Made by a program: the position numbers and the translations under genes. From positions 124,001 through 188,000 of the IMG/VR virus record IMGVR_UViG_3300024308_000302: a stretch of DNA of 64,000 bases; one strand, written 5' to 3'. Each line of letters starts with the position of its first letter. Position 1 is the first letter of the stretch. Shown one piece after another: positions 787-15,014 of the stretch. The notes under the pieces were generated by a model. It was not told the origin of the DNA, searched no databases, and worked only from the letters and a program-made list of their open reading frames with translations.

Positions 787-845
787 GTGTAGTAGGATTC
801 GAACCTAACAAATGGTTAACAAACCAAGCTCCCAACTGAGTACAC
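787..845 (-). pseudogene. Shrunken tRNA-Asn(GUU)-like element
   Basis: - strand GTGTA-CTCAGTTGGGAG-C-TTGGTTTGTTAACCA...TAGGTTCGAATCCTA-C-TACAC; 5-bp acceptor, no CCA. Confidence 0.5.
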
Positions 846-880
846 TGGCAATTATATCTAATTAGAGGAATTATTGCAAG

Positions 881-1288
881 TTAATAAGAATAAAATTTTC
901 TCATTCTAATTGATTTGTTAATGATTTTCCTAAGCTCTACTTTTTTCTGAACAACATCAGAAGTAGCTTCGATTACCTTGAAAATACGATTTTGTAAGGC
1001 TTCTACATCTTCCTGAAATTTAAAGTAGCGTGATTTAGAGAAGTCATCCATTTCTTCATTGAATTCATCATTTTTCAAGTTAACTATGTCTGTCATGTAA
1101 AGACAGGTAGCATAGTTATTCATGTCAGAATAAAAAGTGGCATTAGCTAAAGAAAGCTCATGTTTAGCCAGAGCAACCATCGAATTTACTGATCGCATTT
1201 TATCAAAAAGAACATTTCGTTTTTTAATGTATACTCGCTTGCATGCACGATAAGCACTAAAACTGTTCAAAAATGACATGGAAAACAT
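881..1288 (-). CDS. Hypothetical protein
   Basis: 135-aa ORF on the dominant strand. Confidence 0.65.
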   Translation of the reverse strand: MFSMSFLNSFSAYRACKRVYIKKRNVLFDKMRSVNSMVALAKHELSLANATFYSDMNNYATCLYMTDIVNLKNDEFNEEMDDFSKSRYFKFQEDVEALQNRIFKVIEATSDVVQKKVELRKIINKSIRMRKFYSY

Positions 1289-1418
1289 CCTATATGTATT
1301 TGAATATCTATTTTAGCAAAATACGATAAGAAAGTAAAGAAAAAAGCCACTCAATTTTCTTTTTAACTGACATATAAACTCCTGCTAAATATGTTATGTA
1401 CTTAATAAAGATAATTAA

Positions 1419-1886
1419 TCAAGTGCAAAACAGACCAGAATCTTTTGAGTATAAAATATGTTCAGCATCATTTTTAACAACGAACATAATTTGACCGGCT
1501 GATTCAACCACTTCTTTATCGTTATGGATATGAGCAAAATAAGTATCACAAGTCAAAACACCAAATGGTTCATGTGCAGTTTCTGGATACAAATCGAAAA
1601 GGACAGACAATTGAGATTTTTTCTGTTCTCCTTTCGAAAACCCAAAAAGAACAAAATCTTCGTCAGCAGTACAAACATCAATATCGAATTTGTATTTATG
1701 TGCCAGTGCAATATCAAGTGGATTATCATTGAATGAGTCCCAACCAACAGGATCGCAATCTGTAAAATCTGCCATCACCTTAGTAAGTTGGTCAGATGAC
1801 AAACTTGAAATTTTAGCCAAAGAAATAGAGTGGGATAGGCCCACAATGTCATGTACTTTAAATTGATTCTCTTGCTCATTAGACAT
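1419..1886 (-). CDS. Hypothetical protein
   Basis: Start revised to MSNEQ (ATG 1886); the longer track ORF overlaps tRNAs and a terminator. Confidence 0.75.
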   Translation of the reverse strand: MSNEQENQFKVHDIVGLSHSISLAKISSLSSDQLTKVMADFTDCDPVGWDSFNDNPLDIALAHKYKFDIDVCTADEDFVLFGFSKGEQKKSQLSVLFDLYPETAHEPFGVLTCDTYFAHIHNDKEVVESAGQIMFVVKNDAEHILYSKDSGLFCT

Positions 1887-1944
1887 GTTTGATATCCACT
1901 GTGTTAATGGATGTATTATATCAAAAAAGGATTTTAAAGTAAAT

Positions 1945-1969
1945 AAAAAACCATGCCGAAGCATGGTTT
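1945..1969 (-). terminator. Terminator ending the first tRNA operon
   Basis: AAACCATGC-TTCG-GCATGGTTT followed by T run. Confidence 0.85.
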
Positions 1970-1974
1970 CTAAG

Positions 1975-2051
1975 TGGTGCCCCCGATAGGAATCGAACCT
2001 ATGACGCGGAGTTGTCTTAACTCCCGCTCTACCTGCTGAGCTACAAGGGAC
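1975..2051 (-). tRNA. tRNA-like RNA with non-canonical anticodon loop (UAAGACA)
   Basis: Good D and T arms, encoded ACCA; loop lacks U33 and purine 37; bulged or mismatched acceptor. Confidence 0.6.
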
Positions 2052-2056
2052 TAATC

Positions 2057-2132
<76 letters not shown>

Positions 2133-2235
2133 ATAATGATTTTTTAAAAACAGTGTTTACTCACTGATGTTTTATTCAGCATAAACTGCTCTGTGTTTTT
2201 CTTCACAGTTGGATATGCCAAAAACATATCCGAAA

Positions 2236-2312
2236 TGGTTGCGGGGGTAGGATTTGAACCTACGATCTCCAGCTTATGAGACTGGTGAGTTACCGGGCTT
2301 CTCCACCCCGCG
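2236..2312 (-). tRNA. tRNA-fMet(CAU)-like
   Basis: CGCGGGG/CCCCGCA acceptor with C1:A72 mismatch, CAT anticodon; anticodon stem CCAGT/GCTGG. Confidence 0.9.
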
Positions 2313-2320
2313 TCAAAACT

Positions 2321-2533
2321 TTAAATTACTTTCAAAACTTGCCATTGTCGCTCAATGTTACTATGAACATCATCAAATTCGTCAAGCTCATCAGCAATCA
2401 ACTTGTTCTCTTGCATTCTTTCCATGCTATGAGTGATCTTCTTGCTATCTCGACCCGGAGAGCAGCAACTCAGTGCTCGCTTACCCCAATATTCATAGCC
2501 AGTAGATTTTGAACCTTTAACCGTTCTACTCAT
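2321..2533 (-). CDS. Small phage-type hypothetical protein within tRNA operon
   Basis: GAGGTG SD before ATG; MSRTVKGSKSTGYEYW. Confidence 0.75.
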   Translation of the reverse strand: MSRTVKGSKSTGYEYWGKRALSCCSPGRDSKKITHSMERMQENKLIADELDEFDDVHSNIERQWQVLKVI

Positions 2534-2566
2534 ACTACACCTCTAAATAAAGACACATTTCAAAAC

Positions 2567-2642
<76 letters not shown>

Positions 2643-2835
2643 ATTAAACGGTAACTGTTAGAATCATACAGCCATACCTTTGTTACAGATTCATATAGGC
2701 CATCGAGACAGCCTTCCACAAAGGTTTTAAGCAAGTAGGAGGGTAAGCCTTTCCTCTTTCTTCCCACGGTTCAAGCCGCTTGCTTAGGTAAATCATTTTT
2801 TAAATCTTCTTTTTGTATCTCGTCTTGATGTGCTC

Positions 2836-2864
2836 ATTATAAGCATTGGAACTAGGAATGTCAA
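2836..2864 (-). promoter_or_regulatory. Consensus sigma70 promoter for tRNA operon
   Basis: TTGACA-17 nt-TATAAT. Confidence 0.85.
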
Positions 2865-2970
2865 CATATTTTTTTAAAAAATTGGATATTTTTTTTAGAT
2901 AAAAAACAGTAAGTTATTAACATTTGTATCTAATACTGTTAAAAATGAAAATCAATATCATTTCAAAGTG

Positions 2971-3249
2971 TTAACGTTTAAAAAAATCAAATAACATTTT
3001 AGAAATGAATGTCAAAGCTAAAACTATAAATACAAAACTTGATCCCATACCTACAGCATACAAAATTTTTGAAAACTCCATATAAGAATGATATTGATCA
3101 ATTGTACCTATAAACTTCGACGGATCAGATTTTAGATCCATAAAGCGATTCGCTGAAAATAAAATAAAAATGGCAGCAGAAAAAGTAAAAAAAATAAAAG
3201 CTAATTGACTGTTACCCATATTTGCAATTCTTTTTATTGTATTTAACAT
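2971..3249 (-). CDS. Two-TM membrane protein
   Basis: Two hydrophobic segments; AGGAG SD. Confidence 0.7.
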   Translation of the reverse strand: MLNTIKRIANMGNSQLAFIFFTFSAAIFILFSANRFMDLKSDPSKFIGTIDQYHSYMEFSKILYAVGMGSSFVFIVLALTFISKMLFDFFKR

Positions 3250-3383
3250 GAATATCTCCTTTTATTTTAAAAAAGATAACAAGAAAATAAAATAAATCAA
3301 GTTAAGATTAACTATTATTTAAAGGAATATATAAAATAAAAAGCCAACAAGATGTTGGCTCTAAAGTATTAATCTCAATTAAA

Positions 3384-4055
3384 TCAGTCCGATCTGTTTA
3401 ATTGTTCAATCCGTTTCCAAGTTTCACGGTTTTTAGCTTTCAGCCCCAAAAGGTCTTCAATACTTGCGGGTTGGAATGATTCATCCAGCCACTGCTCAAA
3501 CGTTTTATTCGCATCACCAACAAATACACTTGAGTATGGAACTACAAGTTCTTTCATAGCATAATTCACCAATTTGCGAGAGTGTGTAATAACTACAATC
3601 AAACCTAGTTGCTCATGGTGTTCATTAATTTGTTGTGCGATATATTGGCCAAGAGCAGAAGAATATTCATCAGCCAAACCAAGATCTGGTTCATCAAGAA
3701 TCAACACAGAGTTGGTTTCTTCAACTGTAGCCTGAATTCCTTTGATAGCGGAACTAACACTATTCATACCTGTGCTGCTGTCAGCTTCATCACCAAAAAT
3801 CAAACGTTGCCCAAACGAACCAGAAGTCCGATTTCGCATCGAGCATGAACGTTTTGTTGCATTGGCTTCTTCTGACACATATTCTACAATTTTCCCAATA
3901 ACACTTTTTCCGCTGGCATTAGAACCAACCACAAACAAGATTTTTGAAGTGGGGTTAATATTGAAATTAACTGGAATGATTGCGTTGTTTTCATCATTAT
4001 TGAAAATTTCAGCATTTTCAAAACGGTCTTGTACAAGCTGAATAATGTTGGTCAT
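3384..4055 (-). CDS. ABC-type P-loop ATPase
   Basis: Walker A GSNASGKS, Walker B LILDEPD, H-loop VITH. Confidence 0.85.
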   Translation of the reverse strand: MTNIIQLVQDRFENAEIFNNDENNAIIPVNFNINPTSKILFVVGSNASGKSVIGKIVEYVSEEANATKRSCSMRNRTSGSFGQRLIFGDEADSSTGMNSVSSAIKGIQATVEETNSVLILDEPDLGLADEYSSALGQYIAQQINEHHEQLGLIVVITHSRKLVNYAMKELVVPYSSVFVGDANKTFEQWLDESFQPASIEDLLGLKAKNRETWKRIEQLNRSD

Positions 4056-4146
4056 TAAAGTATTCTCATCAATAAAAAGTAGGTTATCATATCGTATTTT
4101 AAGAATCGAGTCAACAAAAAATCCGACTAGAAGTCGGATTATGAAG

Positions 4147-4911
4147 TTATTTTATTAATTCTGTTTTTTGTTTAGGACAAATGGAAGCATCATCACAGGT
4201 TGCATGAGAGCCCAAAATTAATTCTTTTTGAGTGTCAGTGATAATGGCTTGTTCAAAAGGACGGTGAGATTGTTGAATATAATCAATCAAATAAGAATCA
4301 TATGTCATAACTAAACCAGCTAAAACAACAATAATTATGGCTGGAAACAATAATCCTTCTTTGATGTATTCATAAAGAGTGACAAAAATAATTACATATA
4401 AAATGATATTGAAAAAATATCCATCCTCAAAACTAGAATAATCATCTATAAAGTAAATAAAGTTATATAAAGCCCCAATAAGTGATATTACAATACCAAC
4501 TAAGACTAAAAAAAATGAAAAACCTTTAAATAACTTCTTATTTTTGACAGCATCTAATTTCTCATCAACAGATAAAGATGATGACATAACTCTTCGTAAT
4601 TGTAGAGAATAAATGATTTCTCCAATAATACTGATAGCTAATAGTGAAAATAAAAAGAATATAGAATCATAGTCTGTAACCTCTATGCCAACATCAAAGA
4701 AATATAATGCAGCAAAGTTTAAAATAAATGCAAGGCCAATAATAGAAGTAGCTTTGGATAACATTTTAGAAAGATAGGAACTAATGGATGTGTCAAGTTC
4801 AAATGCTTCATTCAATTCTTTAATCTCTTCTTTCAATTGTTGCTCAGGAGTTATAGTGTCAGTAGCATTTTTTGTTAGCTTTTTTATAACTCGTTCATTA
4901 CGTATTTTCAT
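4147..4911 (-). CDS. Multi-pass membrane protein
   Basis: About five hydrophobic segments. Confidence 0.75.
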   Translation of the reverse strand: MKIRNERVIKKLTKNATDTITPEQQLKEEIKELNEAFELDTSISSYLSKMLSKATSIIGLAFILNFAALYFFDVGIEVTDYDSIFFLFSLLAISIIGEIIYSLQLRRVMSSSLSVDEKLDAVKNKKLFKGFSFFLVLVGIVISLIGALYNFIYFIDDYSSFEDGYFFNIILYVIIFVTLYEYIKEGLLFPAIIIVVLAGLVMTYDSYLIDYIQQSHRPFEQAIITDTQKELILGSHATCDDASICPKQKTELIK

Positions 4912-5005
4912 ATAAAGTTGTATATTAATTAATTATAGTATATCAAAGAAAATAAAATATTGAATAGTGTTTTAATATTAATATAATAAATAAAACGAGG
5001 TAATT

Positions 5006-5729
5006 ATGTTAAAAAAAATAAAATCGGCATTAAAAGAAAGGAAATACATAACAGTAAAATATGGTGATGAAATGGCAGTTCATTATCCAAAAAAAAGATT
5101 TTCACCAAAAAATGGTATACATAGAAAATTTTATTTAGGTGATGAATTTTGTTCTAATAATACAGATATTAAAATAGGTTTAATGCCTTATTTAGACAAT
5201 GAATTACCAGATTTAATAATAATAGATGAAAAAACCAATCAGTTGACTGAAATGATTTATGTTGTTGATGGTTTAGGATATATCGGAAGAATAGATTGCG
5301 AAAAACCAGCAAAAATAGTAATTAAAGATGGCAAAATAATAAAAGAACAGTATGCAAGATTCGTAAGAAAAAGAGGTGAAAAGAACCATTATTCGATCAA
5401 ATCAAGGATTGCTAAATTTGGAGTAACACAATACACCATACCAGATACAGTGATATACGAAGAAGATGGAAGTATAAATGAAATAGAATCTTTTTGGAGA
5501 TTTGAAGTTGAAAAAGGAAATCAGTTATACGAATTAGATACTGAACTATTATCTTTTGAAAAATATAGATCCTTTAAATTATAAAAAATGGACACAAACA
5601 GAAAGAATATTGGTAAGTATCTATATGGATGTTGAAGTATACAAAGACATTTTTGATAAATTTGATATTGAATGCAGTATAGAAAGTTTTGAAAAAAATA
5701 AAGAACTATTTGAAATGTACTACACTTAA
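5006..5729 (+). CDS. Hypothetical protein, apparently frameshifted (ORF 5006..5584 continues in +1 frame to 5729)
   Basis: GAGG SD; +1 frame open 5538..5729 ending ...KELFEMYYT just before a terminator. Confidence 0.6.
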
Positions 5730-5760
5730 AAAAAAATCCACCCGAAGGTGGATTAGAATA

Positions 5761-5837
5761 TGGTGGATGTAGATGGATTCGAACCACCACCCCGACCCTA
5801 CACAGGCCAGTATACTACCAATTAAGATTATACACCC
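5761..5837 (-). tRNA. tRNA-like RNA with Ala-type acceptor (G3-U70, A73) and aberrant anticodon arm
   Basis: GGGTGTA/TACATCC-ACCA, T arm GGTGG-TTCGAAT-CCATC; 9-nt loop CTGTGTAGG. Confidence 0.6.
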
Positions 5838-5986
5838 ATAGTCGCAGCATTATGCCACTTGACCTTCGCCCCTAACCTACGCTTGGCCCGGATGAACCTA
5901 ATGTTCATCTCCCGTATAAATAGAGCCGGTTCACCCAACCGTTTTATTCAGACACTAAGTCCAAAGCTCTTTAAAACATAATAATT

Positions 5987-6182
5987 TGGTGCCGGAAAAA
6001 GGATTCGAACCTATACTCACCCAGTTAGCATGCCGCCTTCCAAGTAGCTCTCACTTAAATTTTCACTATGTTCAAAAGTAATCGGCCTAATTACCCATTA
6101 CAAAGCTTCCATTTAAGTTCTATGCCGTTCTGGTGATTGATCGATTCACCCACTTGCACAAACCATTGAGACTTATTCCAAC
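5987..6182 (-). ncRNA. 196-nt tRNA-like RNA with a large structured insertion in place of the anticodon arm
   Basis: GTTGGAA/TTCCGGC-ACCA acceptor, AGG-TTCGAAT-CCT T arm, nested internal helices. Confidence 0.6.
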
Positions 6183-6265
6183 ATGTAAAGTGAGAACAAC
6201 AAACAAGCTGAATTTCTTCGCCTTCACTGACGCCATTAACTAGGTCAATGTGTTCTTCTCAAAAC

Positions 6266-6344
6266 TGGTCGGAGTGGCAGGATTCGAACCTGCGACATCT
6301 TGCTCCCAAAGCAAGCGGTATAAGCCGGGCTAACCTACACTCCG
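6266..6344 (-). tRNA. tRNA-Pro(UGG)
   Basis: CGGAGTG...TT-TGG-GA...CACTCCGACCA. Confidence 0.93.
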
Positions 6345-6365
6345 TATCAACTCTTTATGGTGGCC

Positions 6366-6394
6366 ATTATAGCCTAAAACTAGTTAACCGTCAA
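6366..6394 (-). promoter_or_regulatory. Sigma70 promoter for Pro/tRNA-like operon
   Basis: TTGACG-17-TATAAT. Confidence 0.8.
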
Positions 6395-6417
6395 CACCTT
6401 TTTTTAATTATTTTCAA

Positions 6418-7260
6418 TCATTCATGACATTGGTACAAAGCAAAAACAGTATCATCAGGCATAGAAGACATAGTTGTCCAAATAGATTCCAACCAAGCAA
6501 GCTCATCAGCAATTGGAAGTGGGCCAATACAATGAGGTTTTTTATTGATTTCGCCATTAATGATGAACGCATAAGACGCAACTGAATACAGTTCACGAAG
6601 TCTTACAAACAATTCTCGTTCTGGTTCATAATCATAAATGCTTGCATACATAGGGAAAGTGCCTTTCTTCTGCTCTTCCCAAAACTCATCATGAAAAGCA
6701 TCGCCCAAATAGTTATTATGTTTTGCAGCTAACGCATAGAAGGCATCATAATGGCGACCAGCAAATTCACCAGATTCTTTAAAGATGCGTTCAAAATCGA
6801 TATCACCTTTTAAGACCATATCAGCAGTATTCGGGCGAATTACAGTGCCTTTGCGTGGAATACCAGTTTTAATACCAGTTCGACCTTCTTTAACATAATA
6901 GAATCCAGCCCATCCACCACCAAGGGTAAATCCATTGCATTCAGCAAGATCATTTTGGCGTGAAAGAACTTTTTGAACTTGACCAGTATCATCAAGAGTG
7001 TAATACCCATTGTAATGCTCACCATAAGTATCTACTTCTTGGCCGGGTTTAAGCTCATTAATGCACATGTTTTCACATTCATTCAACAAATAATCTGAAA
7101 GAAATCCTTCAAAATCTGCTGGCATTTGAATGCCCAAGTCATACGTAATATCTTTTAGTACCATATAAGGATTAGGCAGTTCTGGAACATGAACACTGGA
7201 ATATTTCAGCATTTGCTGCTCTGGATTATCACCAATCACAGTTACAATAAACGAACCCAT
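6418..7260 (-). CDS. Phage hypothetical protein
   Basis: Start revised to MGSFIVTVIGDNPE (GAGGA SD); LGGGWAG motif. Confidence 0.8.
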   Translation of the reverse strand: MGSFIVTVIGDNPEQQMLKYSSVHVPELPNPYMVLKDITYDLGIQMPADFEGFLSDYLLNECENMCINELKPGQEVDTYGEHYNGYYTLDDTGQVQKVLSRQNDLAECNGFTLGGGWAGFYYVKEGRTGIKTGIPRKGTVIRPNTADMVLKGDIDFERIFKESGEFAGRHYDAFYALAAKHNNYLGDAFHDEFWEEQKKGTFPMYASIYDYEPERELFVRLRELYSVASYAFIINGEINKKPHCIGPLPIADELAWLESIWTTMSSMPDDTVFALYQCHE

Positions 7261-7317
7261 AAGAAAATCCTCATAAAAAATTTGACTGATTATAACATAA
7301 AAATAAGCATATACCAA

Positions 7318-8187
7318 TTAAATAATATGCATATCAAACAAATCTAAATTACTAGTCAAAGTTGTTTTATCTGATGCATAATCTATCCTAAACTTATATA
7401 GAAAACCTTTAAAACCATCAAGTCCATTAATAGCTAAATCATTATATGATGGATAATCATTAAATATATCACTAAATAGATCTGGAAAATCTTCACAACA
7501 TCTCATTATATTTAAAAAACTATTTTCGAAATTCAAATAATCACTTGAATATAATTCTGGTATGTCATTCACACCAAAAATAATAGTCTTATTTGAAAAA
7601 GATGAATTACAAAAAAACTCAATATTAGTAATTGTTTTTTTGTGATCATTCATTGTCTTAACCAAAAAGATAGACGATTTATTAAGAAAGAGAGTCGTCA
7701 AATCTTTTTCTTTAACAGTAGCTGAAAAATCAAAACGTCTTTCGAAATGAGCAGACATAAAATTGAAAGATGCATCTACAGAAATAGAAACATAATTAGT
7801 ATTCATTAGTATAGTGCTTGGTATATTTGAAATATCAAATTTAAATGTTATAAGAAAACGTTGATTTTCAAAAGGCACAGTAGAGTGATATCTTTTTTGC
7901 TTTAACTCACTTTGGTCAGAATAATAATTTGTTTTATTGTCTAAAGAGATATCAACATAATTAATTGTTCCAAGATAGTTGAAATTATATATCCAACGTT
8001 TACTAGAAGAAGCATGGGGGTTATATTTAAATAAAAAATTATCCATAGGGTGCAAAGAACTTGCCGTAATATCACAAGTGAATTCCAATAATGCAAGTAA
8101 CTTTAAATTTATAAACGATTCAAAGTCATCTGCTATATCTATATCATAATGCTCTACATCACATTTTATTGCGTTAAAAATAGACAT
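7318..8187 (-). CDS. Hypothetical protein, C-terminal motif family
   Basis: 289 aa; ends LDLFDMHII. Confidence 0.75.
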   Translation of the reverse strand: MSIFNAIKCDVEHYDIDIADDFESFINLKLLALLEFTCDITASSLHPMDNFLFKYNPHASSSKRWIYNFNYLGTINYVDISLDNKTNYYSDQSELKQKRYHSTVPFENQRFLITFKFDISNIPSTILMNTNYVSISVDASFNFMSAHFERRFDFSATVKEKDLTTLFLNKSSIFLVKTMNDHKKTITNIEFFCNSSFSNKTIIFGVNDIPELYSSDYLNFENSFLNIMRCCEDFPDLFSDIFNDYPSYNDLAINGLDGFKGFLYKFRIDYASDKTTLTSNLDLFDMHII

Positions 8188-8289
8188 AAAATATCCTAAA
8201 AAATTTTGCTAATTATAACATATAACAAATGAAAAAACCATATTAAATATAGTATATCAACCATTTTAATAGAGCAAAAAAAATAAATA

Positions 8290-8496
8290 AAAAAAAGAGC
8301 TATCCATCACTGGAAGCTCTTCTTAAATTAGTGCTGGCTAGCCAGCCTAGTTCCTATTTTTTAAATTTCCCCTCGAAAGGAGCAAAAATGTGTCTACCAA
8401 TTCCACCACCTCAGCATAACTGAGAGAAGGACTCGAACCTTCAAATAAGAACAATCAGGACGTAAACGCGGGAAACAGTCTGGTTGTTGTCTTGAT
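8290..8496 (-). ncRNA. Stand-alone ncRNA containing a circularly permuted tRNA-Leu-like domain (core 8350..8452)
   Basis: Order T arm, loop-closed 7-bp acceptor, Leu-type D arm; enclosed by a 10-bp stem; promoter TTGTCT-17-TACTCT (8503..8531), terminator 8289..8320. Confidence 0.75.
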
Positions 8497-8538
8497 GCTT
8501 ATAGAGTAACAAAAACTAACTATACAGACAAGATATTT

Positions 8539-8763
8539 TTAATTTTTTATGTCCCATTTAGACGAATGGTTGTGGGTAATTTTGAATATGCTAACCATCA
8601 TAATGCAAATGATAGCCTGAACAACAGAAAAAGAAACAACATCTTTAAGAACATCTTGTTTAAATATTGCGGCAAGTCCAAATAAAATAGCAGATATTAC
8701 AACATGACCAAGCACATACATAATCAAATAACGATTAATATTTTTTGGTTCTGGAGCACTCAT
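8539..8763 (-). CDS. Small two-TM membrane protein
   Basis: Hydrophobic segments; GAGG SD. Confidence 0.7.
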   Translation of the reverse strand: MSAPEPKNINRYLIMYVLGHVVISAILFGLAAIFKQDVLKDVVSFSVVQAIICIMMVSIFKITHNHSSKWDIKN

Positions 8764-8857
8764 AATTGAAGCCTCAAAAGTTAAATAAAAAACACTTAAT
8801 CTAAATTGATACTATTATATCAAAACAGAAAAAGTGTTTCAACTGATTTACTTAGAT

Positions 8858-9343
8858 TTAAACCAAAAAGAGTTTTTTCATTTCTGTAATGCGTTCCTCA
8901 GTAAAACTTCGAGCAGAAAATTTATTAGGCTCCGATTCTTTATTTCGAATGAGTGCAGCTTGCTTTTGAAGAACCTCAATTTGCTTCTCGATTTCGTGAA
9001 GCTTGTTAGCGTCATCTATATCAAGATTACGCTGTGCTGTTTCAAATGCATTATTCAAAAATTTCTCAATAAGATGCCTATCATGAACCAAATGATAAAC
9101 AACAGATTGATCTCCAAGACACATACCATTTGCCTGACTGTATACGTCCATTGATGACCAAGACTTTTCACTTACTGGATCAAGCAACGTAACATCTTTA
9201 CTTGTGCTAAATTGATGTTCAGTAATATGCTCAACAACAGAAATTGCATTTTGCATGAATCGTTTAAAATGATAACTGTTATTCCAAAGATACATATCTT
9301 TAAGATTAACTACTTTATCACCAACTTTAAATTTAGTTTCCAT
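8858..9343 (-). CDS. Hypothetical protein
   Basis: KFKVGDKV start, C-terminal coiled coil; GAGG SD. Confidence 0.75.
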   Translation of the reverse strand: METKFKVGDKVVNLKDMYLWNNSYHFKRFMQNAISVVEHITEHQFSTSKDVTLLDPVSEKSWSSMDVYSQANGMCLGDQSVVYHLVHDRHLIEKFLNNAFETAQRNLDIDDANKLHEIEKQIEVLQKQAALIRNKESEPNKFSARSFTEERITEMKKLFLV

Positions 9344-9352
9344 AAATTAACC

Positions 9353-9871
9353 TCAAATAACAGAAAATGCTGTTTTCAGTTCTTGATTGATACCAAGCTT
9401 AGAGTGTTCTTTTAGAACATCTTTTAACCATGATTTTTTATCAATATTTTGATTTTTGATGCCAAGTTTAGCAACCTCAACAATACTTGAAATCATTTCT
9501 TTTTGGATTTCAACATAGCGTTCGCCATAAACTTCTTTTGCAACTTCGGCTGGATTGTTAATTTTTCCATATTTGTTAAACAGAACAAGAATAGAGTCAG
9601 CACGATAGCGATCAGTTACTGAATTATCGTTAGCATATTTTGAGATTTCATACTTAAAATATTTCAAAGACAGTTCATGTTTCAATGGAGTAGTAATAAA
9701 GAAATCGAGAGCTTGTCGCCAAACCCAAATACCAGTTTCTGAATGCCAAGCATCAATCTTACGATAAACCATCACGAGTTTATCTTGAATAGTAGCCGTG
9801 GCATAAGGGACTTTTTTGATTCGAGCAAATTGCTTCAATGGTTCCATAATGATACTCTCATGTTTTGTCAT
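9353..9871 (-). CDS. Hypothetical protein
   Basis: 172-aa ORF, operon with 8858..9343. Confidence 0.7.
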   Translation of the reverse strand: MTKHESIIMEPLKQFARIKKVPYATATIQDKLVMVYRKIDAWHSETGIWVWRQALDFFITTPLKHELSLKYFKYEISKYANDNSVTDRYRADSILVLFNKYGKINNPAEVAKEVYGERYVEIQKEMISSIVEVAKLGIKNQNIDKKSWLKDVLKEHSKLGINQELKTAFSVI

Positions 9872-9929
9872 AAGCTGTATTATAACAAATTTGAGTTAAC
9901 GAAACAAGAAAAATCAGCCATATGGCTGA

Positions 9930-11039
9930 TTAATCATCTACTGGTTCGATGGAAAATAACATGCCATCACCACCATTAAAGTATGTCATAATTTTATAAC
10001 GACCGGGTTTAACTTTGATAGCAATACCATCATACATCAAAACAGCTTCTTTAAATGACATATTGCAATTTTTAGCATATTCCTCAAGAACTGTACCATC
10101 AACAACTTGAACAGTAAACAGATCGTAGTCAAAAGTTCCTTTTGCTCTAAATCCATCTACATTAATAGGAAATGTTGATTTTGATTTATTCTGCCAAGAT
10201 TCAGCATAAACAGATGCAATAACTTTAGTGGTTTTATTATAAATAACAGAAGTTGGCAATCGCCCAGAATTAACACGAAGAACTCCTTTAGCCAACCAGT
10301 ATTCTTGTGTGTACAAGCGTCCAGCATCTGAATAATGAGACATTGGTAATTCAGATTTACTATCAATATAATCGTTAGCAGCAAAAATATTGAAACCAAC
10401 TAAATCATCAAAATCATTTGCAATAACAATATGTTCAGATTTAATATCAATAAATTGTTCAACAGTATTAATGCCATTTGGATAAGGGCATTCAAGGCTG
10501 TTGTCATCATGAGACATTAAGCTTTGAATACTGTTGTGTACAAAGTTCCAACTTGGATGTTGTGAATTGATTTCTGGACTTAAAGAAATAATTCCATCTT
10601 TCATATAATAGTTATTATTACGACCACAAACACGGCAAGAACCATAAGTGGAATTGAAATGAAGCATTGGAGCCAATTTAAAATGAACAGGGGCTTTCAA
10701 AATATCAGATTTGATTGCTTCATAGGACTCATTTTTAACAATTTTATTATGAACTTCTTCAATCAAACGGCCAAGTAAAGTCATAACATTTGACTTAACA
10801 GTATTGTAAAAATGTTCATTGCCAGATACATGCAATTGAGCAAGCGTTTTACCATTAAACATATTTTTATTATGACCACCAAAATCAAAGACTGTAGCAT
10901 CAAAAGCATCTTTCAAGTCATTGTTAAAAATAGTTTCTTGAACGGATTCAATAGTAGCAGCCCAATCATCATTATTATTGATTGATTTTTGGCATTGATT
11001 GTAAATTGAATCAACAAGTGCTGGATAATTTAGAAACAT
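9930..11039 (-). CDS. Hypothetical protein, CxVCG paralog family
   Basis: DFGGHN, CRVCGR, VKPGRYK motifs shared with neighbour. Confidence 0.85.
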   Translation of the reverse strand: MFLNYPALVDSIYNQCQKSINNNDDWAATIESVQETIFNNDLKDAFDATVFDFGGHNKNMFNGKTLAQLHVSGNEHFYNTVKSNVMTLLGRLIEEVHNKIVKNESYEAIKSDILKAPVHFKLAPMLHFNSTYGSCRVCGRNNNYYMKDGIISLSPEINSQHPSWNFVHNSIQSLMSHDDNSLECPYPNGINTVEQFIDIKSEHIVIANDFDDLVGFNIFAANDYIDSKSELPMSHYSDAGRLYTQEYWLAKGVLRVNSGRLPTSVIYNKTTKVIASVYAESWQNKSKSTFPINVDGFRAKGTFDYDLFTVQVVDGTVLEEYAKNCNMSFKEAVLMYDGIAIKVKPGRYKIMTYFNGGDGMLFSIEPVDD

Positions 11040-11116
11040 AGAATAATTTCCTTAAAATGATGAACAATTATAACATAATTAAAGATCAAAAACAACAAAG
11101 CCAGTAGAAACTGGCA

Positions 11117-12205
11117 TTAGATTTGTTCCATGAAGAAAAAAACAGGTCTATCGCTATATCGATGGGCACTATAGCAGGTCACTTTATATCGACCCGGTTT
11201 GACAGAAATTTTTTCTGCCCCAGCTTGACTTAATGCAAGACTCAGAGTTTTCTTTTGCTCTTTACAAACTTTTTTGAATTCTTTTAATGTCATCATTTGA
11301 ACTGCCCAAACCTCAGTAGAGACAGTCATTTTTTTAACCATATTAGAAATATCAATAGGGAATGAATACATTTTTTTAGATTTCCAAGCATCGGTATCAA
11401 TTGCTGCAATAGATCCAGTTACTTTGTCTACACAAAGATGAGGGCTTGTATTACCACTTTGGACATAAATAACATTTTTGTTATTCCAAAACTCTTGGCT
11501 GTATTTAACACCTAAATCACTGTTAATATCATTGCTATAGCCAGATTTTTCTGAAATGTATTTCGCAGATTCCATATACAATTTTGGAAATACAGAAATG
11601 ATATTATCACTGACAACTAGAGTTGTGTCATCGATATCAATTTCATACGAATATGAATCAAGACCATCTGGCAATGAACAAGTGTGTGAGTTGCGTTCAG
11701 AGAAATGCAAAGAATACAGTTTTTGTTCCATTGCTGATAAGTTATTCCAAAGAGGATGCTTCTCAGTAACATGAGCATCTTTTGAAATTACACCATCACC
11801 CATGAAATAATTTGTTCTGCGACCACAAACAAAACAATAATCATCATGAATTTGAAACATAGAAAAAACAGAAGGTTTTGACAAGAACGAGTCTTGTACA
11901 GACGTTAACGAAAGACCCTCAGAAATAAGGTGTTCAACACTGGCAATCAACATTGACAAATTAGAAACCGTTTTCTTTTTAATTGTATCAAAAAGTTCAT
12001 TTGAATGACGATATTTAGAATTCATAAGATCTTTTAAAGTTTCACCTTCAAAATCCCGTAAATTATGGCCAGAAAAATCAAGCACAGTCGATTCAAATGG
12101 TTCTTTCAAAAATCCATCAATAACACGGATTTCAAGACAATCTTTAGTGCCATTAGAGATTTCTGTAAACAACAGTTCAATTAGACTAGAGTAATTAAAA
12201 ATCAT
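11117..12205 (-). CDS. Hypothetical protein, CxVCG paralog family
   Basis: DFSGHN, CFVCGR, VKPGRYK. Confidence 0.85.
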   Translation of the reverse strand: MIFNYSSLIELLFTEISNGTKDCLEIRVIDGFLKEPFESTVLDFSGHNLRDFEGETLKDLMNSKYRHSNELFDTIKKKTVSNLSMLIASVEHLISEGLSLTSVQDSFLSKPSVFSMFQIHDDYCFVCGRRTNYFMGDGVISKDAHVTEKHPLWNNLSAMEQKLYSLHFSERNSHTCSLPDGLDSYSYEIDIDDTTLVVSDNIISVFPKLYMESAKYISEKSGYSNDINSDLGVKYSQEFWNNKNVIYVQSGNTSPHLCVDKVTGSIAAIDTDAWKSKKMYSFPIDISNMVKKMTVSTEVWAVQMMTLKEFKKVCKEQKKTLSLALSQAGAEKISVKPGRYKVTCYSAHRYSDRPVFFFMEQI

Positions 12206-12240
12206 TTTTATACCTTATAAAAAATAAGCCAACCCGAAGG

Positions 12241-12423
12241 TTAGCTAATATTTTGAGTGACTTGAAGAGCATATCGATGCTGCACAATACGATGGGTCAC
12301 ATTAGGTTCTTTTTCATCAAAGTCTTTTTTGATCTCGCGTGCTTTACGTCGAGTGAATGCACGGTCAATAACTTTTTTACTTAGACCTTGAACAATATCA
12401 TATTCATACTTAAACTGTCGCAT
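12241..12423 (-). CDS. Small hypothetical protein
   Basis: GGAGG SD; followed by UUCG terminator. Confidence 0.7.
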   Translation of the reverse strand: MRQFKYEYDIVQGLSKKVIDRAFTRRKAREIKKDFDEKEPNVTHRIVQHRYALQVTQNIS

Positions 12424-12432
12424 ATGTCCTCC

Positions 12433-13032
12433 TTAAGACTTGTCTGGATTTTGTGCTTGGAACTTTTCCCACTCTTGTTGAATGATATTTCGTGGAAGGT
12501 ATACAGAAACATCAGATTGCTCACCATCAACAAGAACTTTGACAGTAGAGTAGGCTACGTTGATACCCACTACTTCTTGTTTTGCATTAAGAACAGGTCC
12601 ACCAGACATACCACGAATAATCAGAGTTTTCACAGCACGATAATCTGTTTTATCATGAGCGTTTACCGTACCAATATCAGCACCTTGTCGAATAGTAGGT
12701 TCTTTTTGGTAAGGGCGTGGATAACCAGTCATGGAAAGGATTTCGCCTTTTTGAGCGTCTGCCCATACTGGAACTACATTCGAACGTTTTTTAACAAAAC
12801 GAACATCATAATCTTCTGAGTTGTAAGCCACCTGATGTTTTACATCGGAATGTTTTACAGTAACAGCATAATCTTTGTTCCATTGCACATAGCTGGAAGT
12901 AGCATTTCCAACAAGACCATCACGAACAAGCATTTGGCCATAAGGAGAACCAACATCAGTTTTATGGCTAGCACAACCCGTGCAAATAGCAAAAACAGCA
13001 ATCATAGCAAGAGCGATTTTTTTAGAGAACAT
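12433..13032 (-). CDS. Trypsin-like serine protease lipoprotein
   Basis: Signal peptide with lipobox-like TG-C; AVTVKH, YD, GMSGGPV catalytic motifs. Confidence 0.85.
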   Translation of the reverse strand: MFSKKIALAMIAVFAICTGCASHKTDVGSPYGQMLVRDGLVGNATSSYVQWNKDYAVTVKHSDVKHQVAYNSEDYDVRFVKKRSNVVPVWADAQKGEILSMTGYPRPYQKEPTIRQGADIGTVNAHDKTDYRAVKTLIIRGMSGGPVLNAKQEVVGINVAYSTVKVLVDGEQSDVSVYLPRNIIQQEWEKFQAQNPDKS

Positions 13033-13154
13033 TTACAACCTCATTAGTCTGTGTGTTTGATGGGATGATTATAACAAAAGTATTCTATTTAATCAAGAAA
13101 TATAATCTATTTAGGAGCAAAGAAATCTCCAAAAATAAAAAAGGGCCGAAGCCC

Positions 13155-13697
13155 TTATGAAACCTGAATCAGTGTTCGTGCATGCTCAATGTCTTGGATG
13201 CCTTGCAGATAAGTTTCAACACTAAACTCACCTTTTTTACTTTCCATCATTTCGTTGTAATTGTCTACACGTTCTTGGAGTTCATCATTTTCAATGAAAT
13301 AATGAGAGCCGTGATTGGTGAAAACAACTTTATTGCCTTCTTGAGTTTGAACAACCCAAGCAGTACCATCACAATCCCACGATTCCCACATCAAATCAAA
13401 GATGAAAATTGCTTTGTACTCAACCCCGTTCACTTTTACTGGGATTTTTAGTTGTTCTTGCATAAAAAGATATTCCATGCGATCAACACGCGATTTTTGA
13501 AACTCTGGCTCAAGAATTTGAGTGAAATTGATAATTCCTTTTCGTTCTTCCTTAGTGTAAGTTTGTTCAAGAACTTTCCACAATTCAGCAGACCACTGAG
13601 AAATATCCTGAGTTGTATTATAAAAAGAAAAATCCGTGTCTTTGACTTTGACACCAAAAACTACCAATTCTTTAACTTGCTCAACGCCAATAGTCAT
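13155..13697 (-). CDS. Hypothetical protein
   Basis: Start revised to MTIG; WESWDCDG and TNHGS motifs. Confidence 0.75.
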   Translation of the reverse strand: MTIGVEQVKELVVFGVKVKDTDFSFYNTTQDISQWSAELWKVLEQTYTKEERKGIINFTQILEPEFQKSRVDRMEYLFMQEQLKIPVKVNGVEYKAIFIFDLMWESWDCDGTAWVVQTQEGNKVVFTNHGSHYFIENDELQERVDNYNEMMESKKGEFSVETYLQGIQDIEHARTLIQVS

Positions 13698-13769
13698 TTT
13701 GATTATCTCTTTAAGATTGAGAGACAATTATATCACACTAATGAAATTGGAACAATAAAAAAAAGAGGC

Positions 13770-14012
13770 TCAAGCCTCTTTTTCTTCTACAGTGACAACC
13801 AAACCATTAACTAATTCAGCATGAGTACAAACTTTCTGCACAATAATCAAATCGAACTTCAAATCAGATTGTTTAATTTCTGGTTGACCAGTCATATACC
13901 ACACGCCTGCATTATGATAGGCCATCATAATTACAAGACCATATTGAACGGAATAATAAGTATGGTCAGTGATCTCAATATTTTGTGGATTATGGAGACG
14001 TTCTTTTGACAT
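13770..14012 (-). CDS. Hypothetical protein
   Basis: GAGG SD, own promoter-like upstream region. Confidence 0.7.
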   Translation of the reverse strand: MSKERLHNPQNIEITDHTYYSVQYGLVIMMAYHNAGVWYMTGQPEIKQSDLKFDLIIVQKVCTHAELVNGLVVTVEEKEA

Positions 14013-14080
14013 GAAAACCTCTATGATTTGTTTGGATTGACCGTATTATACAAGGTATACGGTTTTTAAACAAGAAAAAT

Positions 14081-14284
14081 TTAGTCTTCTTCTTGTTTTA
14101 CTGGTTGACGCAGTGGGAATTCAGCATAATCATAATACTGACGTTCGCCTTTTTCCTTGAGTTCATCAACCATGGCAATAGCCATTTCTGGAGTTGATAC
14201 TACATCAATAACTTGACGATCTGCAACAGTTGGGTAGTATCGGTCCCAACCATAGACCAGATAAACAAAAACTTCTTTTGACAT
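14081..14284 (-). CDS. Hypothetical protein
   Basis: GAGGA SD; GWDRYYP. Confidence 0.7.
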   Translation of the reverse strand: MSKEVFVYLVYGWDRYYPTVADRQVIDVVSTPEMAIAMVDELKEKGERQYYDYAEFPLRQPVKQEED

Positions 14285-14296
14285 AACTTATTCCTC

Positions 14297-14644: not shown

Positions 14645-14693
14645 GATACAACTCCATTAATTCAGGCAATTATAACAAAATAACTCATAGTTA

Positions 14694-14981: not shown

Positions 14982-15014
14982 AGATTTAACACCATATTAT
15001 TGAAAGGTCATCAA

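What the first reader, a model, noticed from the sequence alone, without database searches (positions are those of the whole stretch)
5987..6182. 196-nt tRNA-shaped RNA with ~120 nt of structured insertion
Seen: the ends form GUUGGAA/UUCCGGC plus ACCA, with a T loop (AGG-UUCGAAU-CCU) and a D-like UCAAUGGU. Between them are nested helices CAAGUGG/CUACUUG, GGUGA/UCACC, ACUUAAAU/AUUUAAGU and GUAAU/AUUAC. The architecture is tmRNA-like, but it lacks G3-U70 and an obvious tag ORF, and the insert is small for a group I intron. Inference: an ncRNA that uses a tRNA-like end for RNase P maturation and stability.
Basis: partly seen in the sequence, partly recalled or inferred. Interest (0 to 1): 0.62.

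Follow-up and report, generated by a model that had tools for sequence, protein, structure and literature searches.

The report
tRNA-shaped RNA with D-loop insertion
This is a real, conserved non-coding RNA built like a tRNA but with a roughly 110-base two-armed module inserted in its D-loop; it is a previously undescribed family from huge, largely unannotatable bacterial-type replicons, and its function is still unknown.

Summary
The 196-nt element (minus strand, 6182..5987) is real. ARAGORN and Rfam do not call it, and its single-sequence folding energy is unremarkable. However, I recovered 11 further distinct homologues (187-189 nt) from related metagenomic contigs.

On the 12-sequence alignment, a cloverleaf-plus-insertion structure is 92% paired. 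It has 18 pairs with compensatory changes, and no shuffle or slid control comes close.

The frame is a full tRNA cloverleaf:
- a 7-bp acceptor stem, 100% paired, with covariation;
- a GCUC/GAGC D-stem with A14, R15, G18, G19 and A21;
- an anticodon-like arm;
- a T-loop and an encoded ACCA end.

The 110-113 nt insertion sits inside the D-loop, directly after G19. It does not replace the anticodon arm. It forms two arms, with an AGUA/GAA internal loop and two apical loops that always carry a 6-nt palindrome.

It is not a tmRNA: position 3:70 is U·G, there is no tag ORF, and the topology is wrong. It is not a group I intron either. It probably does not decode, because the anticodon loop varies and is 15-17 nt in the window.

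The likeliest reading is a stable RNA on a tRNA chassis, processed by RNase P, whose insertion is the working part. The function itself is inferred, not shown. Two relatives have lost or truncated it.

The parts
6366..6394 (-). Sigma-70-type promoter of the operon (TTGACG, 17-nt spacer, TATAAT).
   Evidence: Matches 11 of 12 consensus positions. The same TTGACG-N17-TATA(A/C)T promoter sits upstream of the homologous operons in L036, L037, L038, L040 and L108.
6266..6344 (-). tRNA-Pro(UGG), the first gene of the operon.
   Evidence: Called by ARAGORN and by Rfam tRNA at 61.8 bits.
6183..6265 (-). Conserved, apparently structured 5' leader in front of the element.
   Evidence: It lies in a stretch 100% identical to L036 over window 6173-6379, although the flanking coding DNA is about 90% identical. 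It aligns with the leaders of nine homologues (alignment A4).
5987..6182 (-). The 196-nt tRNA-shaped RNA (element X).
   Evidence: Covariance model R1 scores it at 109.5 bits, E = 2e-25. nhmmer gives E = 2e-35. Alignment A3 holds 12 distinct sequences.
6176..6182 (-). Acceptor stem, 5' strand (GUUGGAA).
   Evidence: Pairs with 5991-5997. This helix is 100% paired in 12 sequences, with both-side changes at two pairs.
6163..6171 (-). D-stem 5' strand (UCUC) and D-loop nucleotides A14, A15, U, G18, G19 (AAUGG).
   Evidence: GCUC/GAGC is invariant in 11 of 12 sequences. AAUGG is invariant except for one U-to-C change.
6119..6162 (-). Insertion arm 1. It has a basal helix UUUGUGC/GCAUAGA, an AGUG/GAA internal loop (AGUA/GAA in relatives) and the hairpin GGUGA-AUCGAUCAA-UCACC.
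   Evidence: Helices 3-5 carry 4, 1 and 2 pairs with both-side changes. AGU and GAA are invariant. The loop palindrome is AUCGAU here and UGAUCA in relatives.
6053..6118 (-). Insertion arm 2. It has a basal helix ACUUAAAU/AUUUAAGU and the hairpin GUAAU-GGGUAAUUAGGCCG-AUUAC.
   Evidence: Helices 6-8 carry 2, 1 and 3 pairs with both-side changes. The loop palindrome UAAUUA is conserved, and is UAGCUA in L037.
6047..6052 (-). GAGAGC: the D-loop A21 equivalent and the D-stem 3' strand.
   Evidence: A-GAGC is invariant in all 12 sequences.
6019..6045 (-). Anticodon-like arm, with stem ACUUGG/CUGGGU. In the window the loop is expanded to 15-17 nt, depending on whether the G143-C159 pair is counted, and carries an inner 3-bp hairpin. 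Relatives have a 7-nt loop.
   Evidence: Helix 9 is 96% paired, with both-side changes at 143:164 and 144:163.
5998..6014 (-). T arm (AUAGG-UUCGAAU-CCUUU, with one U-U mismatch).
   Evidence: The T-loop GUUCRAAUCC is conserved apart from one substitution in L097. Relatives use a stem register shifted by one position, which is 88% paired against 55% for the canonical register.
5987..5997 (-). Acceptor stem 3' strand (UUCCGGC) with discriminator A and encoded CCA.
   Evidence: ACCA is invariant in 12 of 12 sequences.
5838..5986 (-). Spacer holding a second conserved RNA element (Y, core about 5842-5913). It acts as the leader of the next tRNA-like gene.
   Evidence: 81-85% identical copies occur in L037, L038 (two copies) and L039, and a 95% identical copy in L036.
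5764..5837 (-). Marginal tRNA-like gene, the last gene of the operon.
   Evidence: Rfam tRNA scores 29.5 bits against a gathering cut-off of 29. ARAGORN calls it only at a relaxed threshold.
5735..5754 (-). Intrinsic terminator (AAUCCACC-UUCG-GGUGGAUU followed by a U run).
   Evidence: Found and conserved in L036.

Best explanation
The element is a member of a previously unannotated family of tRNA-derived non-coding RNAs.

What is shown:
- It keeps a complete tRNA cloverleaf frame. This comprises a 7-bp acceptor stem with an encoded ACCA end, a D-stem with the tertiary-interaction nucleotides A14, R15, G18, G19 and A21, an anticodon-like arm and a T-loop.
- A conserved 110-113 nt module is inserted in the variable part of the D-loop, directly after G19.
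- The module folds into two arms. Arm 1 carries an invariant AGUA/GAA internal loop of the loop-E or S-turn type. Both arms end in loops that contain a 6-nt palindrome.

What is inferred:
- It is transcribed from a sigma-70-type promoter as part of a small operon of tRNA and tRNA-like genes.
- It is released at G1 by RNase P and ends at the encoded CCA.
- It folds into an L-shape from whose elbow side the two arms protrude.
- It does not act as a decoding tRNA.
- The tRNA chassis supplies processing and stability, and perhaps binding to tRNA-handling proteins.
- The insertion is the working part. It is most likely a platform for a partner, or for self-association through its palindromic loops.
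For: Homologues:
- Eleven further distinct homologues were found next to homologues of the neighbouring 280-aa gene and by a metagenome pattern scan.
- There is one copy per locus.

Structure on alignment A3:
- 91.8% of cells are paired.
- 18 pairs show changes on both sides.
- 0 of 500 shuffles reach any of the five measures.
- Slid controls reach at most 47% paired.
- RNAalifold independently gives the same topology.

The frame is a tRNA:
- Deleting alignment columns 21-133 leaves 76-77 nt in relatives and 86 nt in the window. ARAGORN of these 12 as tRNA at the 90% threshold.
- Ordinary tRNAs align end to end with model R1 at about 10-31 bits, with the insertion skipped.

Conservation:
- Element X is more conserved than the adjacent protein gene at DNA level in 44 of 55 pairs, with means of 83% against 76%.
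- The diverged window copy keeps helices 3, 5, 6 and 8 with entirely different sequences.
- All 12 members have palindromes of at least 6 nt in both apical loops. There are two independent replacements, UAGCUA in L037 and AUCGAU in the window. The chance per random 9-nt loop is about 0.06.

Operon setting:
- A promoter and a terminator frame the operon.
- ACCA is invariant.
Against: - No expression or end-mapping data were available, so the RNase P cut, the retention of the insertion and any function are inferences.
- The D-stem never varies, so covariation says nothing for or against it. In the window its first pair is a U-C mismatch.
- The single-sequence fold is no better than shuffles (z = -0.43).
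- X is dispensable. L036 has an imprecise 110-nt deletion. L108 and L109 lack X and its leader.
- The window copy is the most diverged member, at 65-70% identity.
- An engineered insertion between positions 16 and 18 of the D-loop of E. coli tRNA-Tyr was not stably expressed (PMC5397188).
- The palindromes could instead be DNA-level protein-binding sites.
- Twelve related sequences are a small sample.
Confidence: 0.6

Rival explanations
1. It is an interrupted tRNA gene. The D-loop insertion would be a new kind of intron, either self-splicing or removed by an unknown enzyme. Its removal would leave a working 76-77 nt tRNA with anticodon AAU or UAU (Ile) or UAC (Val) in relatives.
For: - The insertion boundaries fall exactly between G19 and A21. 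Its removal leaves a canonical D-arm, GCUC-AAUGG-NA-GAGC, and an exact tRNA length.
- Five of the eleven relatives have an anticodon loop of standard form, CUAAUAC, with U33 and A37.
- ACCA is kept in all members.
Against: - The anticodon is not conserved: it is AAU, UAC or UAU.
- Position 37 is C in six of the eleven relatives.
- The window copy has a 15-17 nt loop.
- The T stem is non-canonical in relatives.
- ARAGORN rejects all 12 'spliced' forms at its default threshold.
- No Rfam intron or self-cleaving ribozyme model matches.
- The base at the 3' boundary (column 134) varies among G, A and U, so there is no conserved terminal G as in group I introns.
- In the consensus structure the two boundaries do not lie in one bulge-helix-bulge.
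- The loops of the insertion are more conserved than a passive intron would need.
- The loss in L036 is imprecise, so it is not an intron-sized excision.
Confidence: 0.12
2. The tRNA-like body is mainly a processing signal, as mascRNA is for MALAT1. Cleavage by RNase P at its 5' side and trimming at its 3' side would release the conserved flanking RNAs (the 5' leader and element Y), and these would be the functional products.
For: - The roughly 85-nt leader is conserved and appears to form hairpins (by inspection). It lies in a stretch 100% identical to L036 although the flanks are about 90% identical.
- Element Y is conserved and recurs as the leader of another tRNA-like gene.
Against: A processing signal alone does not explain why the 110-nt insertion is conserved in structure and loop sequence. 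An ordinary tRNA would serve as a processing signal just as well.
Confidence: 0.12
3. In the window's own lineage the element is a decaying or neutrally drifting tRNA-derived relic with no present function.
For: - The window copy is the most diverged member.
- It has an expanded anticodon-like loop and a D-stem mismatch.
- Its closest relative, L036, carries a destructive 110-nt deletion.
- L108 and L109 lack X altogether.
Against: - All helices of both insertion arms, the acceptor stem and the T arm remain intact in the window through compensatory replacement.
- Both loop palindromes and the GAA and AGU motifs are kept.
- This pattern is not expected under neutral decay at 30-35% divergence.
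Confidence: 0.1
4. It is a miniature tmRNA-like molecule that is charged and used in trans-translation.
For: - It has a tRNA-like acceptor and T arm with CCA, plus an extra structured domain.
- Short in-frame stretches ending in UAA or UAG can be read in the loop region of arm 2. I saw these by eye only.
Against: - Position 3:70 is U-G in 12 of 12 sequences, not G-U.
- ARAGORN in tmRNA mode finds nothing even at a relaxed threshold.
- The Rfam tmRNA model gives only a 5.8-bit T-loop fragment.
- The molecule has a D-stem and an anticodon-like arm, which tmRNAs lack.
- The candidate 'codons' lie inside covarying helices.
- No pseudoknots were found.
Confidence: 0.02

Closest known systems
Canonical bacterial or phage tRNA (Rfam RF00005)
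   Same: - A 7-bp acceptor stem, discriminator A and encoded CCA.
- U8, a GCUC/GAGC D-stem, and A14, R15, G18, G19 and A21.
- A 5-6 bp anticodon-type stem and a GUUCRAAUCC T-loop.
- Location in tRNA operons.
- Ordinary tRNAs align end to end with the family model.
   Different: - A 110-113 nt two-arm insertion after G19.
- One or two extra bases between position 9 and the D-stem.
- An anticodon loop that is variable, or 15-17 nt in the window.
- A shifted or mismatched T stem.
- It is not detected by ARAGORN or Rfam.
tmRNA (SsrA)
   Same: A tRNA-like acceptor and T arm with CCA, joined to a larger structured domain. It is presumably an RNase P substrate.
   Different: - No G3-U70, no tag ORF and no pseudoknots.
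- It keeps a D-stem and an anticodon-like arm.
- The extra domain comes out of the D-loop.
- It is 187-196 nt long.
GOLLD and ROOL RNAs of phages and prophages
   Same: - Structured RNAs of unknown function encoded next to tRNA islands in phage-like DNA.
- They assemble through kissing loops (PMC12286853). X has two conserved palindromic apical loops that could do the same.
   Different: - GOLLD and ROOL are 580-800+ nt and are not built on a tRNA frame.
- There is no Rfam match here.
- Self-association of X is only inferred.
Engineered tRNA scaffolds and aptamer-tRNA fusions (for example the 183-nt Spinach-tRNA of PMC5397188)
   Same: A tRNA body carrying a foreign structured module of about 100 nt. 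The total size is nearly identical. The tRNA body provides processing and stability.
   Different: - X is natural and conserved.
- The engineered fusion was stable only with a variable-loop insertion. Its D-loop insertion at positions 16/18 failed.
- X is inserted after G19, which leaves G18 and G19 intact.
YrlA (bacterial Y-RNA-like) tRNA mimics and the phage T4 stable RNAs species 1 and 2. I cite both from memory and did not test either here.
   Same: tRNA-like modules within non-coding RNAs. The T4 RNAs are co-transcribed with phage tRNAs and their function is unknown.
   Different: - The YrlA tRNA module has a closed acceptor stem and is permuted.
- There is no sequence or Rfam relationship.
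- X has free ends with CCA.
Intron-containing tRNA genes: bacterial group I introns, and archaeal bulge-helix-bulge introns at non-canonical sites
   Same: A tRNA gene interrupted by an extra segment.
   Different: - Bacterial group I introns sit in the anticodon loop (bioRxiv 10.1101/2020.01.27.920355, abstract seen). From memory, they are about 200 nt or longer.
- No catalytic core or bulge-helix-bulge is seen here.
- The 'exons' do not make a convincing decoding tRNA.

Membership tests
tRNA (functional decoding tRNA) | A 7-bp acceptor stem, a discriminator base and a CCA end. | tested here: met
   100% paired in 12 sequences. ACCA is invariant.
tRNA (functional decoding tRNA) | A D-arm with conserved A14, R15, G18, G19 and A21. 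| tested here: met
   GCUC-AAUGG...A-GAGC is conserved. However, it is split by the insertion, and the stem is invariant, so there is no covariation evidence for it.
tRNA (functional decoding tRNA) | A 7-nt anticodon loop with U33, a purine at 37 and a conserved anticodon. | tested here: not met
   The window loop is 15-17 nt. Relatives have anticodons AAU, UAC or UAU, with C37 in six of the eleven.
tRNA (functional decoding tRNA) | Recognised by tRNA finders, with a length of about 70-95 nt. | tested here: not met
   ARAGORN, including its intron mode, and Rfam find nothing at 196 nt. Even with the insertion removed, 0 of 12 pass the default ARAGORN threshold and 9 of 12 pass at 90%.
tmRNA | The G3-U70 alanine identity pair. 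| tested here: not met
   U3-G70 in 12 of 12 sequences.
tmRNA | A tag reading frame with a resume codon, flanked by pseudoknots. | tested here: not met
   ARAGORN in tmRNA mode finds none. The consensus structure is fully nested, and candidate codons lie inside covarying helices.
tmRNA | A tRNA-like domain without a D-stem or anticodon arm, with the rest of the molecule in place of the anticodon arm. | tested here: not met
   A D-stem and a covarying anticodon-like arm are both present. The insertion is in the D-loop.
tmRNA | A match to the Rfam tmRNA clan models. | tested here: not met
   Only 5.8 bits over 11 nt of the T-loop.
Group I intron in a tRNA gene | A catalytic core (P3-P9) detectable by the Rfam Intron_gpI model, with a size of about 200 nt or more. 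| tested here: not met
   No match at E <= 10. The insertion is 110-113 nt.
Group I intron in a tRNA gene | Location in the anticodon loop and a conserved terminal G. | tested here: not met
   The insertion is in the D-loop. Column 134 varies among G, A and U.
Archaeal-type bulge-helix-bulge intron | Both splice sites lie in 3-nt bulges separated by a 4-bp helix. | tested here: not met
   By inspection of the consensus structure, the 5' boundary abuts helix 3 and the 3' boundary abuts helix 6. No bulge-helix-bulge joins them.
GOLLD/ROOL-type self-assembling phage RNAs | Homo-oligomerisation through inter-molecular kissing loops. | not testable with these tools
   The only evidence is the conserved palindromic apical loops. 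There is no Rfam match to GOLLD or ROOL.
RNase P substrate (tRNA-like) | Cleavage at position +1, directed by the acceptor/T-arm stack and the 3' RCCA. | not testable with these tools
   The sequence prerequisites are present. No end mapping was available.

The most novel reading that the evidence does not exclude
X would be a natural 'tRNA-scaffolded' RNA. The two palindrome-tipped arms grafted onto the D-loop would make tRNA-shaped units self-assemble by kissing loops into dimers or larger assemblies. It would be a small cousin of the ROOL and GOLLD cages, encoded in tRNA islands of Mb-scale, ORFan-rich replicons. Alternatively, the arms would tether a partner to tRNA-handling machinery.
Probability: 0.22. 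Interest if true: 0.8.

Novelty: new variant of a known kind. Interest (0 to 1): 0.62.

Why it matters
tRNA-derived non-coding RNAs are known (tmRNA, YrlA, mascRNA). As far as I could find, none is a complete cloverleaf that carries a conserved domain of more than 100 nt in its D-loop.

Reasons it would matter if true:
- It would show that the outer D-loop can host a large module in nature. An engineered insertion at a nearby D-loop site, between positions 16 and 18, was not stably expressed.
- It would add a compact member of about 190 nt to the poorly understood set of structured RNAs encoded in phage-like tRNA islands.
- It gives a well-defined and cheap target for structure and oligomerisation work.
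- It flags a clade of 0.8-1.9 Mb replicons that is rich in odd tRNA-like RNAs and almost devoid of recognisable proteins.

Tried and rejected
- **tRNA, tmRNA and intron detection.** ARAGORN in default, intron, tmRNA and relaxed modes, and Rfam at gathering and at E <= 10, do not call the element. At the lowest ARAGORN threshold only implausible chimeras appear.
- **Phage database.** INPHARED phage genomes, in near and distant modes, match only the neighbouring tRNAs.
- **IMG/VR scans.** An exact 27-mer found only the window's own contig. Three gapped patterns found only chance pairs of tRNAs, coding DNA or nothing. Single-protein locus searches found only self.
- **GTDB genome scan.** All 13 hits were chance tRNA pairs, with no family member.
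- **Mobility of the insertion.** The 110-nt insertion has no second copy in the window or in any fetched locus, so it is not an obvious mobile repeat.
- **Origin of the frame.** The nearest ordinary tRNAs are of the Met(CAU) type at only 68-69% identity. This does not decide the origin.
- **Neighbouring 280-aa protein.** It has no Pfam hit and one PHROG family of unknown function. The AlphaFold2 model has pLDDT 85 but no PDB fold match, with the best E = 1.8. It gives no functional lead.
- **Alternative pairings.** Columns 23-28 with 79-84 are 83% paired, with 3 pairs changed on both sides. I kept this as a possible alternative conformer and did not resolve it. A first attempt at this helix was mis-registered by one column. 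An extension of the D-stem, AAU/AUU, is invariant and therefore uninformative.
- **Literature.** Searches found no description of a tRNA-like RNA with a D-loop insertion.

Full report
**1. Observation**

The features are GUUGGAA...UUCCGGC-ACCA, the T-loop UUCGAAU and a UCAAUGG motif near the 5' end.

- ARAGORN in default, intron, tmRNA and relaxed modes does not call it. Rfam at gathering score and at E <= 10 does not call it either.
- Its minimum free energy is no better than that of shuffled sequences (z = -0.43).
- On the window alone, therefore, the case is weak. It rests on comparison with homologues.

**2. Setting**

The element lies in a compact unit on the minus strand, in this order:

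| Part | Window coordinates |
|---|---|
| Promoter TTGACG-17-TATAAT | 6394..6366 |
| tRNA-Pro(UGG) | 6344..6266 |
| 83-nt leader | 6265..6183 |
| The element (X) | 6182..5987 |
| 149-nt spacer with a second conserved element (Y) | 5986..5838 |
| Marginal tRNA-like gene | 5837..5764 |
| Intrinsic terminator | 5754..5735 |

The window is 100% identical to part of IMG/VR contig UViG_3300024308_000302 (290 kb). It is also 100% identical over 14.2 kb to a locus from the 1.54-Mb contig Ga0247725_1000001.

**3. Homologues**

- No phage in INPHARED and no other IMG/VR contig carries the element.
- The upstream ORF (6418-7317; 280 aa in relatives) has 19 homologues at 59-94% identity.
- I fetched their contigs and ran one metagenome pattern scan. 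Together these gave 11 further distinct copies of the element, each 187-189 nt.
- There is one copy per locus, always inside an operon of tRNA and tRNA-like genes with the same type of promoter and terminator.
- A scan of GTDB species genomes found only chance matches.

**4. Structure**

On the 12-sequence alignment A3, RNAalifold predicts the following:

- the acceptor stem;
- a helix joining GCUC (columns 12-15) to GAGC (columns 136-139);
- two arms between them;
- a hairpin of anticodon-arm type;
- a T arm.

I counted this structure explicitly, using the better T-stem register:

| Measure | Result |
|---|---|
| Cells paired | 91.8% |
| Pairs with changes on both sides | 18 |
| Shuffles reaching any measure | 0 of 500 |
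| Slid controls | at most 47% paired, at most 8 such pairs |

Per helix:

- The acceptor stem is 100% paired. Pair 1:72 takes the forms G-U, A-U and G-C. Pair 2:71 is G-C or U-G. Pair 7:66 is A-U or G-C.
- Helices 3, 5, 6, 8 and 9 each have 2-4 pairs with changes on both sides.
- The diverged window copy keeps these helices with quite different sequences: UUUGUGC/GCAUAGA, GGUGA/UCACC, ACUUAAAU/AUUUAAGU and GUAAU/AUUAC.

However, it conflicts with the D-stem, with the covarying helix 4 and with the anticodon-like arm. Its pair 29:143 also fails in exactly the three sequences where 143:164 has switched to C-G.

**5. The frame is a tRNA and the insertion is in the D-loop**

- The bases around the insertion read U8-A9-(A/AG)-GCUC-A-A-U-G-G | insertion | N-A-GAGC-U. 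This is the most common D-arm, with A14, R15, G18, G19 and A21 in place.
- Deleting columns 21-133 leaves 76-77 nt in relatives and 86 nt in the window.
- ARAGORN accepts 9 of these 12 as tRNA at its 90% threshold and none at the default threshold.
- Model R1, built from the family, aligns ordinary tRNAs of the window and loci end to end at about 10-31 bits by skipping the insertion. It finds no second copy of the family in the window.
- The insertion therefore sits in the variable stretch after G19. From established tRNA structure, this stretch points to solvent. The G18/G19-T-loop elbow can thus be kept.

Departures from a working tRNA:

- The anticodon-like loop is CUAAUAC, CUAAUCC, CUAAUCA, UUUACCG or UUUAUCG in relatives, and 15-17 nt in the window.
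- The T stem of relatives pairs in a register shifted by one position (88% paired against 55%), which gives an 8-nt loop.
- There are one or two extra bases before the D-stem.

**6. The insertion**

- Arm 1 (window 6162..6119) has a basal helix, an internal loop with invariant AGU(A/G)G opposite invariant GAA, and a hairpin. I read the internal loop as a loop-E or S-turn-like motif. That reading rests on the sequence pattern only.
- Arm 2 (window 6118..6053) has a basal helix of 4-8 bp, an inner helix and a hairpin.
- Both apical loops contain a perfect palindrome of at least 6 nt in all 12 members.
  - Hairpin ii carries UGAUCA in 11 members and AUCGAU in the window.
  - Hairpin iii carries UAAUUA in 11 members and UAGCUA in L037. 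The L037 form is a double change that keeps self-complementarity.
  - A random 9-nt loop has such a palindrome with probability of about 0.06.
- The sequences are related, so this amounts to one conserved state plus two independent replacements.
- An alternative pairing of the arm-1 5' strand with columns 79-84 is also fairly well supported. It may be a second conformer.

**7. What it is not**

- **tmRNA.** Position 3:70 is U-G in all members. There is no tag frame and there are no pseudoknots. A D-stem and an anticodon-like arm are present. The tmRNA models do not match.
- **Group I intron or known small ribozyme.** There is no Rfam match. The insertion is 110-113 nt, lies in the D-loop and has no conserved terminal G.
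- **Bulge-helix-bulge intron.** The two boundaries abut different helices.
- **Mobile repeat.** No second copy exists in the held sequence.

**8. Evolution**

- X is more conserved than the adjacent protein gene at DNA level in 44 of 55 pairs, with means of 83% against 76%. The window copy is the outlier at 65-70%.
- The closest relative, L036, is about 90% identical in the flanks and 95-100% identical in the operon. It has an imprecise 110-nt deletion of positions 10-119, which destroys the D-stem and both arms.
- L108 and L109 join tRNA-Met directly to the downstream RNAs. This looks like a deletion between the similar ...CGCUACCA ends of tRNA-Met and X.
- X is therefore an accessory element that has been lost repeatedly.

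**9. How it probably works**

Shown:
- a conserved family;
- a tRNA frame with a two-arm D-loop insertion;
- an invariant ACCA end;
- location inside an operon.

Inferred from established tRNA biology:
- RNase P cuts before G1, helped by the encoded RCCA.
- The 3' end is the CCA.
- An L-shape forms with an intact elbow.
- The variable or expanded anticodon loop argues against decoding.

Most likely, the tRNA body gives processing, stability and perhaps access to tRNA-binding proteins. The insertion would then be the functional surface. The palindromic loops suggest self-association by kissing loops. This is known for ROOL and GOLLD, which are also encoded near tRNA islands in phage DNA (PMC12286853).

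An engineered Spinach-tRNA fusion of 183 nt was stable and active in translation only with a variable-loop insertion. The version with an insertion at D-loop positions 16/18 was not detectable (PMC5397188). Large modules on tRNAs can therefore be tolerated, and the site matters.

**10. Host replicon**

- Contigs carrying the family or its neighbouring gene reach 0.77, 0.83, 1.54, 1.84, 1.86 and 1.92 Mb.
- Thirty ORFs were scanned across the two libraries (twenty in each, ten in both) and gave only a handful of hits.
- The window is 32% G+C and has more than 20 tRNAs on one strand, two CUA-anticodon tRNAs and a bacterial-type SRP RNA.
- I did not settle whether this is a giant phage-like element or an unusual cell.

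**11. Limits**

- The alignment has twelve related sequences.
- The D-stem is invariant, so it has no covariation support.
- No expression data were available.
- Every functional statement is an inference.

Noticed in passing
window 1083-15323 = L053; contigs behind L040, L051, L053, L105: The window belongs to a 1.54-Mb contig (100% identity over 14.2 kb). Relatives lie on contigs of 0.77-1.92 Mb from independent assemblies. Almost none of 30 ORFs tested has a Pfam or PHROG hit. This looks like a Mb-scale, ORFan-rich replicon with bacterial-type promoters and terminators, and IMG/VR lists a 290-kb piece of it as viral. Its nature is unresolved.
   Followed up: partly
window 8380-8470 (-), up to the terminator near 8300: A circularly permuted tRNA-Leu-like module. 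It consists of a T arm (GAAGG-UUCGAGU-CCUUC), then a closed acceptor hairpin (UCUCAGU-UAU-GCUGAGG), then a Leu-type D arm (GUGGAAUUGGUAGACAC). All of this is enclosed by the stem GUUCUUAUUU/AAAUAGGAAC. The topology resembles the YrlA tRNA mimic. It has no Rfam match and is 89% conserved in L036.
   Followed up: partly
window 5842-5913 (-); L037:4990-5062; L038:3011-3141 and 6598-6671: Conserved element Y (GGGAGAUGAAC...GGCAUAAUGCUGCGA), of about 73-130 nt. It recurs as the structured 5' leader of tRNA-like genes and matches no Rfam family.
   Followed up: partly
window 6183-6265 (-); alignment A4: The leader in front of X is itself conserved. By eye it forms two hairpins (GGCUUAG..CUAAGCC and GACAAA..UUUGUC in relatives). 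It lies in a stretch 100% identical between the window and L036, although the flanks are about 90% identical.
   Followed up: partly
L040:7410-7650 and the same position in all non-window relatives: Downstream of X, relatives carry another conserved RNA (Z). This is followed by a tRNA-Ser-like gene of about 115 nt with a long extra arm and no encoded CCA (Rfam tRNA 35 bits). The stretch is 84-98% identical across relatives and is absent from the 64-kb window.
   Followed up: partly
window 790-850 (-): A miniature tRNA-like gene with its own promoter-like site and terminator. It has a 5-bp acceptor-like stem (GUGUA/UACAC), a D arm, a 4-nt 'anticodon' loop, a T arm and no CCA.
   Followed up: no
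window 55840-55914, 56849-56923, 39041-39117 (-): Two tRNAs have a CUA anticodon and so are amber-suppressor types. One tRNA has an 8-nt anticodon loop (UUUG). There are also seven tRNA-Leu(UAA) genes. These suggest stop-codon recoding or unusual decoding.
   Followed up: no
window 59334-59429 (-): A bacterial small SRP (4.5S) RNA gene (Rfam 58.7 bits against a gathering score of 40), next to tRNA-Arg.
   Followed up: no
L036:4810-4895; L108:5719-5800: Two independent losses of X. L036 has an imprecise 110-nt internal deletion. L108 and L109 have a clean deletion of leader plus X between the similar ...CGCUACCA ends of tRNA-Met and X.
   Followed up: yes
window 15268-16476 (-): An HNH-type homing endonuclease ORF (PHROG 559, E = 2.5e-82) lies just downstream of tRNA-Gly (16628-16701).
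   Followed up: no
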